Positions 43,706-43,924 of a DNA stretch of 64,000 nt are shown piece by piece; the first letter of the stretch is position 1, and each line of letters opens with the position of its first letter. The stretch is from Malacoraja senta. Its lineage: Eukaryota. The stretch lies in NCBI GenBank assembly GCA_038087875.1, contig CM075977.1:336040001-336104000 (forward strand). Reading direction: 5' to 3'. The notes under the pieces are model-generated. The model was given only the letters and a program-made list of their open reading frames with translations, had not been told where the DNA came from and made no database searches. The position numbers and the translations under genes were made by a program.

Positions 43706-43924
43706 CCACCGCCGGCCCCGTTTTCTCCACGACGTCGGCGATGAAGTTGTACATGAAGCTAGGGCTGTCGGGGGGGACATACGAGCGGCCTGGAGCCGGG
43801 GGAGGGAGAGGCTGAGGCTGTGGCCTAGTCCTTGCCCCAGGTCCTGCTCTTCTCCCTCCCAGCGGGCCCGGAGCAGCAGTGCCGCCGCCCCCAGACCCAG
43901 CCCCAGCCTCAGTGCCGCGGTCAT
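43706..43924 (-). pseudogene. Captured HTRA2/Omi exon-1 fragment (TM segment to start of protease domain)
   Basis: MTAALRLGLGLGAAALLL...LPRLQAA..P, then after a frameshift in a C-run [22 protein letters not shown]; matches the HtrA motif [10 protein letters not shown]. Confidence 0.8.

What the first reader, a model, noticed from the sequence alone, without database searches (positions are those of the whole stretch)
43706..43924. Helitron-borne capture of HTRA2/Omi exon 1 inside a slit2 intron
Seen: within an element bounded by Helitron-type ends (40533-44344, minus) lies an ATG-initiated GC-rich segment encoding a hydrophobic TM-like stretch (LGLGLGAAALLL), then LPRLQAA and, after one frameshift, [22 protein letters not shown]. 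Established: [10 protein letters not shown] begins the HtrA protease domain; a TM segment just upstream is the layout of mitochondrial HTRA2, not the IGFBP/Kazal layout of HTRA1/3/4; Helitrons capture host gene fragments. Inference: a Helitron lineage in this fish captured HTRA2 exon 1 and amplified it. The fragment is in the same orientation as slit2, so it is part of the pre-mRNA.
Basis: partly seen in the sequence, partly recalled or inferred. Interest (0 to 1): 0.8.

Follow-up and report, generated by a model that had tools for sequence, protein, structure and literature searches.

The report
Transposon copy carrying HTRA2 first-exon fragment
This is a decayed, non-autonomous Helitron-type (rolling-circle) transposon in an intron of a slit-like gene that carries a stolen piece of the host protease gene HTRA2 (part of exon 1, the splice donor and the start of intron 1), a well-known kind of event seen here in a cartilaginous fish.

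Summary
On the minus strand, 43916-43707 encodes the transmembrane segment, the linker and the first residues of the protease domain of HTRA2. There is a 1-nt frameshift at about 43779-43781. A GT donor and about 510 nt of GA-rich intron-like DNA follow. The best matches are HTRA2 in PDB (E 5.8e-6) and the HTRA2 exon-1 products of two sharks (88% over 25 aa; tblastn 2e-16).

The ATG at 43924 is not the native start codon. Only about the last two thirds of exon 1 is present, and 23 nt at the exon end are deleted.

The carrier (40533-44344) shares its 5' and 3' terminal regions with two other elements in the window. One of them (3621-4806, plus strand) carries the same HTRA2 exon-intron piece and keeps the intact exon end ...FCIEILGR|GT. 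The other (34296-37050) carries none. The ends fit a canonical Helitron: A|TC...palindrome, 11 nt, CTAG|T, with no target duplication. In this copy the 5' TC reads GC, and its palindrome is degraded. About 14 nt after CTAG are also conserved, so the 3' boundary is not settled.

A LINE (40760-43193) is nested inside. The fragment lies on the same strand as the host gene.

This scan already noted and followed up the same HTRA2-carrying family on other DNA of this genome. Verdict: real, but a new member of a known kind, with modest interest.

The parts
40533..44344 (-). Copy 1: whole non-autonomous Helitron-type element (about 1.37 kb of its own DNA plus a nested 2.4-kb LINE)
   Evidence: Collinear blocks shared with copy 2: 5' region, HTRA2 exon piece, intron-like DNA, 3' region. 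nhmmer profiles of the family's ends hit 44344-44176 (E 5e-39) and 40590-40533 (E 4e-14).
44125..44344 (-). 5' terminal backbone. It begins GCTATAT... after an A (44345). The homologous position in copies 2 and 3 is TCTATAT...
   Evidence: Alignment A3 of four 5' regions; blastn 44287-44178 vs 3703-3812, 68%.
43986..44124 (-). Filler of unknown origin with repeated TCACAATGGG-type motifs; a similar motif recurs at 40605-40625
   Evidence: Read from the sequence; direct repeat D11. No homology to copy 2, copy 3 or the shark HTRA2 loci.
43937..43985 (-). Extra partial HTRA2 exon-1 fragment (..PPSDSPRLKY), a rearranged duplicate of the region just before the protease domain
   Evidence: Direct repeat D7 with 43749-43776, 82%. 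blastn L001 588-613 vs 43962-43937, 84.6%, and a weak tblastn match to P0002 residues 101-116 (E 0.006).
43707..43924 (-). Main HTRA2 exon-1 fragment: TM segment, linker, protease-domain start. It has a 1-nt deletion at about 43779-43781, and 23 nt are missing at the exon end (after 43707)
   Evidence: The deletion at the exon end is seen by comparison with copy 2.
43194..43706 (-). Splice-donor GT (GTGAGG at 43706-43701) and GA-rich DNA taken to be the start of HTRA2 intron 1
   Evidence: 82% identity over 388 nt with copy 2 (43710-43335 vs 4239-4614, E 3e-107). Bamboo-shark intron 1 starts with the same kind of GA-rich sequence at a collinear offset, but the significance is weak (2-12 of 300 shuffles for the first 80 nt).
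40760..43193 (+). Nested 5'-truncated non-LTR retrotransposon (LINE), flanked by TGAGAT at 43199-43194 and 40759-40754
   Evidence: RVT_1 E 5.9e-36 for ORF 41673-42896. The duplication was read from the sequence.
40533..40753 (-). 3' backbone: GGTGGAATATTGC motif, degraded palindrome 40560-40544, then 7 nt and CTAG at 40536-40533, followed by T
   Evidence: Folding is not better than shuffles.
3621..4806 (+). Copy 2: same family and same HTRA2 cargo. It keeps the exon end ..FCIEILGR (to 4242) and the GT donor (4243-4244), lacks the YNFIADVVE codons, begins A|TC and ends CTAG|T
34296..37050 (-). Copy 3: related element without HTRA2. It has 44-nt and 48-nt tandem arrays, a partial internal repeat of the 5' backbone (from 35432), begins A|TC and ends CTAG|T

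Best explanation
A non-autonomous Helitron-type (rolling-circle) transposon family of this cartilaginous fish once picked up genomic DNA from the host HTRA2 gene. The captured piece was the 3' part of exon 1 (TM segment, linker, first residues of the protease domain), the splice donor and several hundred bases of intron 1. The family then copied this piece to new sites. The finding is one old copy. It sits in sense orientation in an intron that splits the Laminin-G domain of a slit-like gene, about 0.5 kb upstream of the next exon. The copy is decayed: it has a frameshift, a 23-nt deletion at the exon end, a rearranged extra exon fragment, a nested LINE, a mutated 5' TC and a degraded 3' palindrome. 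Most likely it does nothing today beyond being transcribed as part of the host pre-mRNA. Shown: the HTRA2 origin, the genomic (unspliced) nature of the fragment, its membership of a repeat family with shared termini, and its strand and intron position. Inferred: rolling-circle mobilisation, a single ancestral capture, and present inertness.
For: HTRA2 identity: PDB best hit is HTRA2, E 5.8e-6. The only real hits among 1.84 billion representatives are shark HTRA2 exon-1 products. One of these lies directly upstream of the Trypsin/PDZ exons in the whale shark. blastn of the bamboo-shark contig 538-721 vs 43826-43644 gave 76.7% over 189 nt, E 3e-32, running across the exon-intron junction.

Genomic capture: vertebrate HTRA2 exon-1 ORFs all end ..YIEI[VL][GD]R. 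Copy 2 ends ..FCIEILGR and then has GT. Both copies continue with about 390 nt of shared GA-rich DNA at 82% identity.

Family and ends: three elements in the window share their 5' and 3' regions. Copies 2 and 3 start A|TC. All three end with a palindrome remnant, 7 nt (11 counting CTAG) and CTAG|T, without target-site duplication. These are the hallmarks listed for canonical Helitrons in PMC4778049 and PMC11417382. Cargo differs between family members.

Context: minus-strand exons encode EGF, then Laminin G in three ordered pieces, then EGF, and copy 1 lies between the first two Laminin-G pieces.
Against: Copy 1 itself starts GC, not TC. Its 3' palindrome does not fold better than shuffled sequence, and no copy has a perfect palindrome. 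About 14 nt after CTAG are conserved in all three copies (10-11 of 14 positions) and form an AT palindrome, so the true 3' end may lie beyond CTAG. That would not be canonical. There is a weak inverted similarity (5-7 of 10) between the 5' end and the sequence around CTAG. I found no RepHel-coding partner in the window and could obtain no empty site. Similarity of the GA-rich part to a real shark intron 1 is only weakly above composition. I verified only two HTRA2-bearing copies; further copies rest on unchecked notes of this scan.
Confidence: 0.72

Rival explanations
1. The carrier is a rolling-circle element of the other group (HLE2: Helentron/Helitron2-type, HINE-like), or another DNA transposon, not a canonical Helitron. 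In this reading the true 3' end is the AT-rich stem-loop after CTAG, and the short inverted similarity of the ends is a degenerate terminal repeat.
For: The 14 nt after CTAG are conserved and palindromic (TTTTATATAAAA in copy 2; TGTT..AACA in copy 3, a possible compensatory change). There is 5-7 of 10 inverted similarity between the 5' end and the CTAG region. Copy 3 has central tandem arrays, as HINEs often do (PMC4067079). [quoted passage not shown]
Against: HLE2 elements insert between T and T and carry 11-18-nt inverted repeats (PMC11417382, PMC4067079). Here the 5' flank base is A in all three copies, the first bases are TC, and the inverted similarity is short and AT-rich. Helraiser shows a strong AT-rich target preference, most pronounced on the 3' flank (PMC4778049). 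That could explain the conserved 3' flank.
Confidence: 0.15
2. The two HTRA2-like pieces are dispersed segmental duplications that only happen to lie between Helitron-like motifs. No transposon moved them.
For: TC and CTRR signals are common in genomes and give many false positives (PMC11417382). Only two cargo-bearing copies were verified here.
Against: The same 5' and 3' terminal regions (about 170 nt and about 60-75 nt; nhmmer E 1e-14 to 1e-45) flank both copies and also a third element with different contents. The copies lie in different orientations and have unrelated flanks.
Confidence: 0.04
3. The copy is not inert. Its captured donor, and in some family members perhaps a captured promoter, acts as an exon trap or alternative first exon for the slit-like gene, as HelibatN3/NUBPL does in bats.
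For: It is in sense orientation in an intron. The GTGAGG donor is retained at 43706-43701. The next host exon starts only about 0.5 kb downstream of the element's 3' end, about 3.7 kb from the donor. There is a precedent in PMC4778049.
Against: The native exon start and promoter region are not detectable in copy 1. The reading frame is broken. A 2.4-kb antisense LINE lies between the donor and the next exon. No expression data are available.
Confidence: 0.05
4. It is a processed (retro-copied) HTRA2 pseudogene.
For: None beyond the presence of coding sequence.
Against: Intron-like DNA follows the exon at the conserved exon-1 boundary. There is no exon 2 sequence, no poly(A) and no target duplication.
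Confidence: 0.01

Closest known systems
HelibatN3 of vespertilionid bats, which captured the NUBPL promoter, first codons and splice donor (PMC4778049; PMC4224331)
   Same: A non-autonomous Helitron subfamily defined by a captured first-exon fragment with its splice donor, spread to many sites including introns in sense orientation. Ends are 5'-TC and CTAG-3', with a palindrome upstream of the 3' end and A|T insertion.
   Different: The host lineage is a cartilaginous fish and the gene is HTRA2. Here the cargo also includes several hundred bases of intron. A captured promoter was not shown. No transcript evidence exists. The copies are old and broken.
Maize and other plant gene-fragment-carrying Helitrons (as summarised in PMC4778049)
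   Same: Genomic (intron-containing) gene fragments sit as internal cargo between conserved termini, and cargo varies between family members.
   Different: Plant elements often carry pieces of several genes. Here one clear host fragment was identified, plus unidentified filler.
HINE/DINE-1 non-autonomous Helentrons (PMC4067079)
   Same: Non-autonomous rolling-circle derivatives. A relative in this window has central tandem repeats, and there is an AT-rich stem-loop-like sequence at or after the 3' end.
   Different: HINEs have 11-13-nt subterminal inverted repeats and insert in TT. These elements start TC after A, end CTAG before T, and have only a weak inverted similarity.
Vertebrate HTRA2/Omi exon 1 (Chiloscyllium punctatum chiPu_0030407; whale shark locus on NC_063332.1)
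   Same: TM segment, linker, ..[21 protein letters not shown], and an exon end at ..EILGR followed by GT.
   Different: The fragment lacks the first ~50 codons, is frameshifted and internally rearranged, and is not followed by exons 2-8.

Membership tests
Canonical Helitron (HLE1), non-autonomous | 5' terminus TC | tested here: inconclusive
   Copies 2 and 3 start TCTATAT. The finding's own copy reads GCTATAT at the homologous position.
Canonical Helitron (HLE1), non-autonomous | 3' terminus CTRR | tested here: inconclusive
   CTAG is present at the same aligned position in all three copies. However, 10-11 of the next 14 bases are also conserved, so whether CTAG is the true end is not settled.
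Canonical Helitron (HLE1), non-autonomous | Short palindrome about 10-12 nt upstream of the 3' end | tested here: inconclusive
   The aligned copies suggest GGGACCC-AAY-GGGTCCC, ending 11 nt before the end. Each copy has 1-3 mismatches, and folding energies are not better than shuffles.
Canonical Helitron (HLE1), non-autonomous | Insertion between A and T, without target-site duplication | tested here: met
   The flank is A on the 5' side and T on the 3' side in all three copies. No duplicated flank is seen. No empty site was available to confirm this.
Canonical Helitron (HLE1), non-autonomous | No terminal inverted repeats | tested here: inconclusive
   Only a 5-7 of 10 AT-rich inverted similarity between the ends.
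Canonical Helitron (HLE1), non-autonomous | Shares its termini with an autonomous RepHel-coding element | not testable with these tools
   No Rep/helicase ORF in the window. The long ORFs tested are reverse transcriptases or Tc1-like, or gave no hit. The rest of the genome could not be searched.
HLE2 (Helentron/Helitron2, HINE) | 11-18-nt terminal inverted repeats, a 3' stem-loop after the right repeat, and T|T insertion | tested here: not met
   An AT palindrome follows CTAG, but the inverted repeats are weak and the 5' flank base is A, not T. Criteria are from PMC11417382 and PMC4067079.
HTRA2 (mitochondrial HtrA protease) exon 1 | TM segment followed by the N-terminus of the protease domain (..[10 protein letters not shown].PAVV), rather than IGFBP/Kazal domains | tested here: met
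HTRA2 (mitochondrial HtrA protease) exon 1 | Exon ends at ..EI[LV][GD]R followed by a GT donor | tested here: met
   Intact in copy 2 (4242|4243). In copy 1 the last 23 nt of the exon are deleted but the GT is kept.
HTRA2 (mitochondrial HtrA protease) exon 1 | Downstream DNA is the parent gene's intron 1 | tested here: inconclusive
   Bamboo-shark intron 1 begins with similar GA-rich DNA at a collinear offset, but 2-12 of 300 shuffles score as well. The whale-shark intron start is masked and was left so.
Processed pseudogene | Spliced exons, poly(A) tail, target-site duplication | tested here: not met
   Intron-like DNA is retained, and there is no exon 2 and no poly(A).

The most novel reading that the evidence does not exclude
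Helitron-borne HTRA2 first-exon cassettes (TM/targeting segment plus splice donor), scattered in sense orientation through introns, act as exon traps in this lineage. They would give host genes, here a slit-like gene, alternative N-termini with a mitochondrial membrane anchor, or new 5' exons.
Probability: 0.04. Interest if true: 0.55.

Novelty: new member of a known kind. Interest (0 to 1): 0.3.

Why it matters
Helitron gene capture is a classic route of exon shuffling in maize and bats. My literature searches found no description of it in cartilaginous fishes and none involving HTRA2. A family that carries a first exon with its splice donor into introns could in principle create chimeric transcripts. 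It can also mislead gene prediction by producing spurious HTRA2-like exons. For this particular copy the practical value is annotation: it is a broken passenger fragment, not a gene.

Tried and rejected
- Protein searches with the 73-aa ORF and with the antisense ORF across the cargo found no relatives. Other copies could therefore not be fetched that way.
- Exact look-ups of three window ORFs found no contig on record.
- Two metagenome DNA scans gave nothing, or one chance bacterial match.
- The first representative search was lost and was rerun. One of its three hits (P0001) is a repetitive protein matched by chance.
- A search with the bamboo-shark exon-1 ORF returned HTRA2 exon-1 ORFs of teleosts, birds and mammals, but no further cartilaginous-fish copies.
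- An alignment of copy 2's upstream GC-rich part (3850-4100) to the 5' part of shark exon 1 looked collinear but was not above shuffles (61 of 300). I therefore do not claim that copy 2 carries the native start codon.
- Rfam found no known RNA in the window.
- No Rep/helicase gene was found in the window.
- The Ns in the whale-shark locus were left unfilled.

Full report
**What is there**

I read 40400-44500 on the minus strand. An ATG at 43924 opens a 73-codon ORF, MTAALRLGLGLGAAALLL...LPRLQAARMSPP.... A second frame continues ...[25 protein letters not shown]. GTGAGG (43706-43701) follows directly, then about 510 nt of purine-rich DNA down to 43194.

**Is it HTRA2?**

- The 29-aa piece 43790-43704 finds HTRA2 chains first in PDB (E 5.8e-6). 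HTRA1 follows at 7e-4 and HTRA3 at 2e-3.
- A phmmer run of 43793-43704 against 1.84 billion representatives gave three hits. One is a repetitive protein matched by chance.
- The second hit is a 134-aa ORF of Chiloscyllium punctatum (chiPu_0030407). It has the start codon, a TM-like segment, the stretch ...[38 protein letters not shown], and then reads into an intron (L001).
- The third hit is a whale-shark gene model (XP_048456612.1, named HSPA12B-like). Its last exon is the same HTRA2 exon 1, and it lies just upstream of exons encoding the trypsin-like and PDZ domains (L002). That locus is therefore the genuine HTRA2 gene with a mis-joined first exon.
- tblastn of the bamboo-shark ORF against copy 1 gives E 2e-16 for the protease-start frame and 2e-7 for the TM/linker frame.
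- blastn of L001 538-721 against 43826-43644 gives 76.7% over 189 nt (E 3e-32) and crosses the exon-intron junction.
- The TM region (43916-43863) aligns to the shark TM codons, and 0 of 300 dinucleotide shuffles reach its score.

Comparison with the shark sequence also corrects some details.
- The frameshift is a 1-nt deletion at about 43779-43781.
- The ATG at 43924 is not the native start, because about 50 native codons are absent.
- A short extra fragment of the same exon (..PPSDSPRLKY, 43985-43937) lies upstream of the ATG, so the cargo is rearranged.

**Genomic fragment, not a retrocopy**

HTRA2 exon-1 ORFs from teleosts, birds and mammals all stop at ..YIEI[VL][GD]R, so this exon boundary is conserved. 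That copy reads ..AAVFCIEILGR and then GTGAGG (4242|4243).

- Copy 1 lacks exactly the 23 nt coding FCIEILGR, a deletion between two GTG.
- Copy 2 lacks the YNFIADVVE codons.
- The two copies therefore complement each other and derive from one longer captured piece.
- After the GT, both share about 390 nt of GA-rich DNA at 82% identity (E 3e-107).
- The bamboo-shark intron 1 also begins with GA-rich sequence that aligns at a collinear offset. Because it is low-complexity, the score is only weakly above shuffles (2 and 12 of 300 for the first 80 nt).
- The whale-shark intron start is masked, and I left it so.
- There is no exon 2, poly(A) or target duplication, which excludes a processed pseudogene.

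**The carrier**

- Copies 1 and 2 are collinear: 5' region (44287-44178 vs 3703-3812, 68%), exon piece, intron piece, then 3' region.
- A third element (34296-37050, minus strand) shares both terminal regions but has no HTRA2. It carries 44-nt and 48-nt tandem arrays and a partial internal repeat of the 5' backbone.
- nhmmer profiles of the ends find only these elements in the window (E 1e-14 to 1e-45).
- Copies 2 and 3 begin TCTATAT directly after an A. Copy 1 has GCTATAT after an A.
- All three end with a remnant of GGGACCC-AAY-GGGTCCC, 7 more bases, then CTAG followed by T. No flank duplication is visible.
- These are the hallmarks of canonical Helitrons: 5'-TC, CTRR-3', a palindrome upstream of the 3' end, and insertion between A and T (PMC4778049, PMC11417382).

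There are weak points.
- No copy has a perfect palindrome, and folding is not better than shuffles.
- The 14 bases after CTAG are also conserved in 10-11 positions and form an AT palindrome.
- There is a 5-7 of 10 inverted similarity between the two ends.
- The conserved 3' flank may reflect the strong AT-rich target preference that Helraiser shows, most markedly on the 3' flank (PMC4778049). It could instead mean that the real end lies a little further on, as in HLE2/Helentron-type elements.
- Those elements, however, insert between T and T and have 11-18-nt inverted repeats (PMC11417382, PMC4067079), which is not seen here.
- I could find no autonomous partner in the window, and I had no way to search the rest of the genome or an empty site.

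**Context**

Minus-strand open stretches encode an EGF domain (about 50691-50596) and then three ordered pieces of a Laminin-G domain, at about 48.4 kb, 40.0 kb and 38.7 kb, covering profile positions 1-41, 48-99 and 89-130. More EGF follows at about 38.6 kb and 29.4 kb. This matches the C-terminal architecture of Slit proteins, and the peptides match my recollection of human SLIT2. The paralogue name was not tool-tested.

Copy 1 lies in the intron between the first two Laminin-G pieces, on the gene's strand. Its 3' end is about 0.5 kb upstream of the next exon, so it is part of the pre-mRNA. A 5'-truncated LINE (RVT_1, E 6e-36) is nested at 40760-43193 in the opposite orientation, flanked by TGAGAT.

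**Comparison with what is known**

The closest parallel is HelibatN3 of bats, which captured the NUBPL promoter, first codons and splice donor and can act as an exon trap (PMC4778049). Here a captured promoter is not shown for copy 1, the frame is broken, and a LINE separates the donor from the next exon. I therefore rate present function as unlikely.

Full-text searches found no paper combining Helitron with HTRA2. None of the papers returned for sharks, skates or elasmobranchs looked, from their titles and abstracts, like a description of Helitron gene capture.

This scan has already flagged the same HTRA2-carrying family on other DNA of this genome. Follow-up agents there reached the same reading, and also reported ALG13 and SAC3D1 cargos in the family. 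I treat those as leads, not evidence.

**Verdict**

- It is a new member of a known kind.
- Interest is about 0.3.

Noticed in passing
window 34296-37050 (minus): Third Helitron-type element of the same family without HTRA2. It has a 44-nt tandem array (36673-36475 and 35822-35432), split by a ~650-nt insert ending in a poly(A)-like run. It also has a 48-nt array (35041-34596) and a second, 5'-truncated copy of the 5' backbone starting at 35432.
   Followed up: partly
L002 10001-52577 (Rhincodon typus NC_063332.1): The RefSeq model XP_048456612.1 ('heat shock 70 kDa protein 12B-like') ends in the genuine HTRA2 exon 1, while the trypsin/PDZ exons are a separate 199-aa model. This looks like a mis-joined annotation of two neighbouring genes.
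   Followed up: partly
window 3836-3845: Copy 2 has a perfect GCGCATGCGC palindrome between its 5' backbone and its GC-rich cargo. To my knowledge this is the NRF-1 site type common in promoters of mitochondrial-protein genes. It is absent from copies 1 and 3. It could be a captured promoter piece.
   Followed up: no
window 3880-4092: GC-rich cargo of copy 2 upstream of the recognisable HTRA2 piece. It contains a short ORF ending in a GTAGGT donor-like site. Its origin is undetermined, and its similarity to the 5' part of shark HTRA2 exon 1 is not above shuffles.
   Followed up: partly
window 44085-44105 and 40605-40625: TCACAATGGG-type motif repeated inside copy 1, on both sides of the HTRA2 cargo (81% over 21 nt), next to TGACGT-like sequences. 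Meaning unknown.
   Followed up: no
window 44498-44546 and 43127-43175: A LINE 3'-end-like sequence (TACAGCA.GGAAACAGGCC...) occurs again in inverted orientation just outside the element, so another copy of the same LINE family abuts copy 1.
   Followed up: no
window 6449-7740, 13466-14662, 17331-18149, 50989-52474, 58874-59461: Other transposon remains: two more reverse-transcriptase ORFs, a weak L1 ORF1-like match, Tc1/DDE_3 transposase pieces, and two ORFs hitting the ALKBH8_N model.
   Followed up: partly
window ~50691-50596, ~48430-48340, ~40010-39850, ~38780-38535, ~29405-29310 (minus): Exons of the host gene (EGF, Laminin G, EGF), consistent with the C-terminal part of a Slit protein. 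Exact splice sites were not determined.
   Followed up: partly
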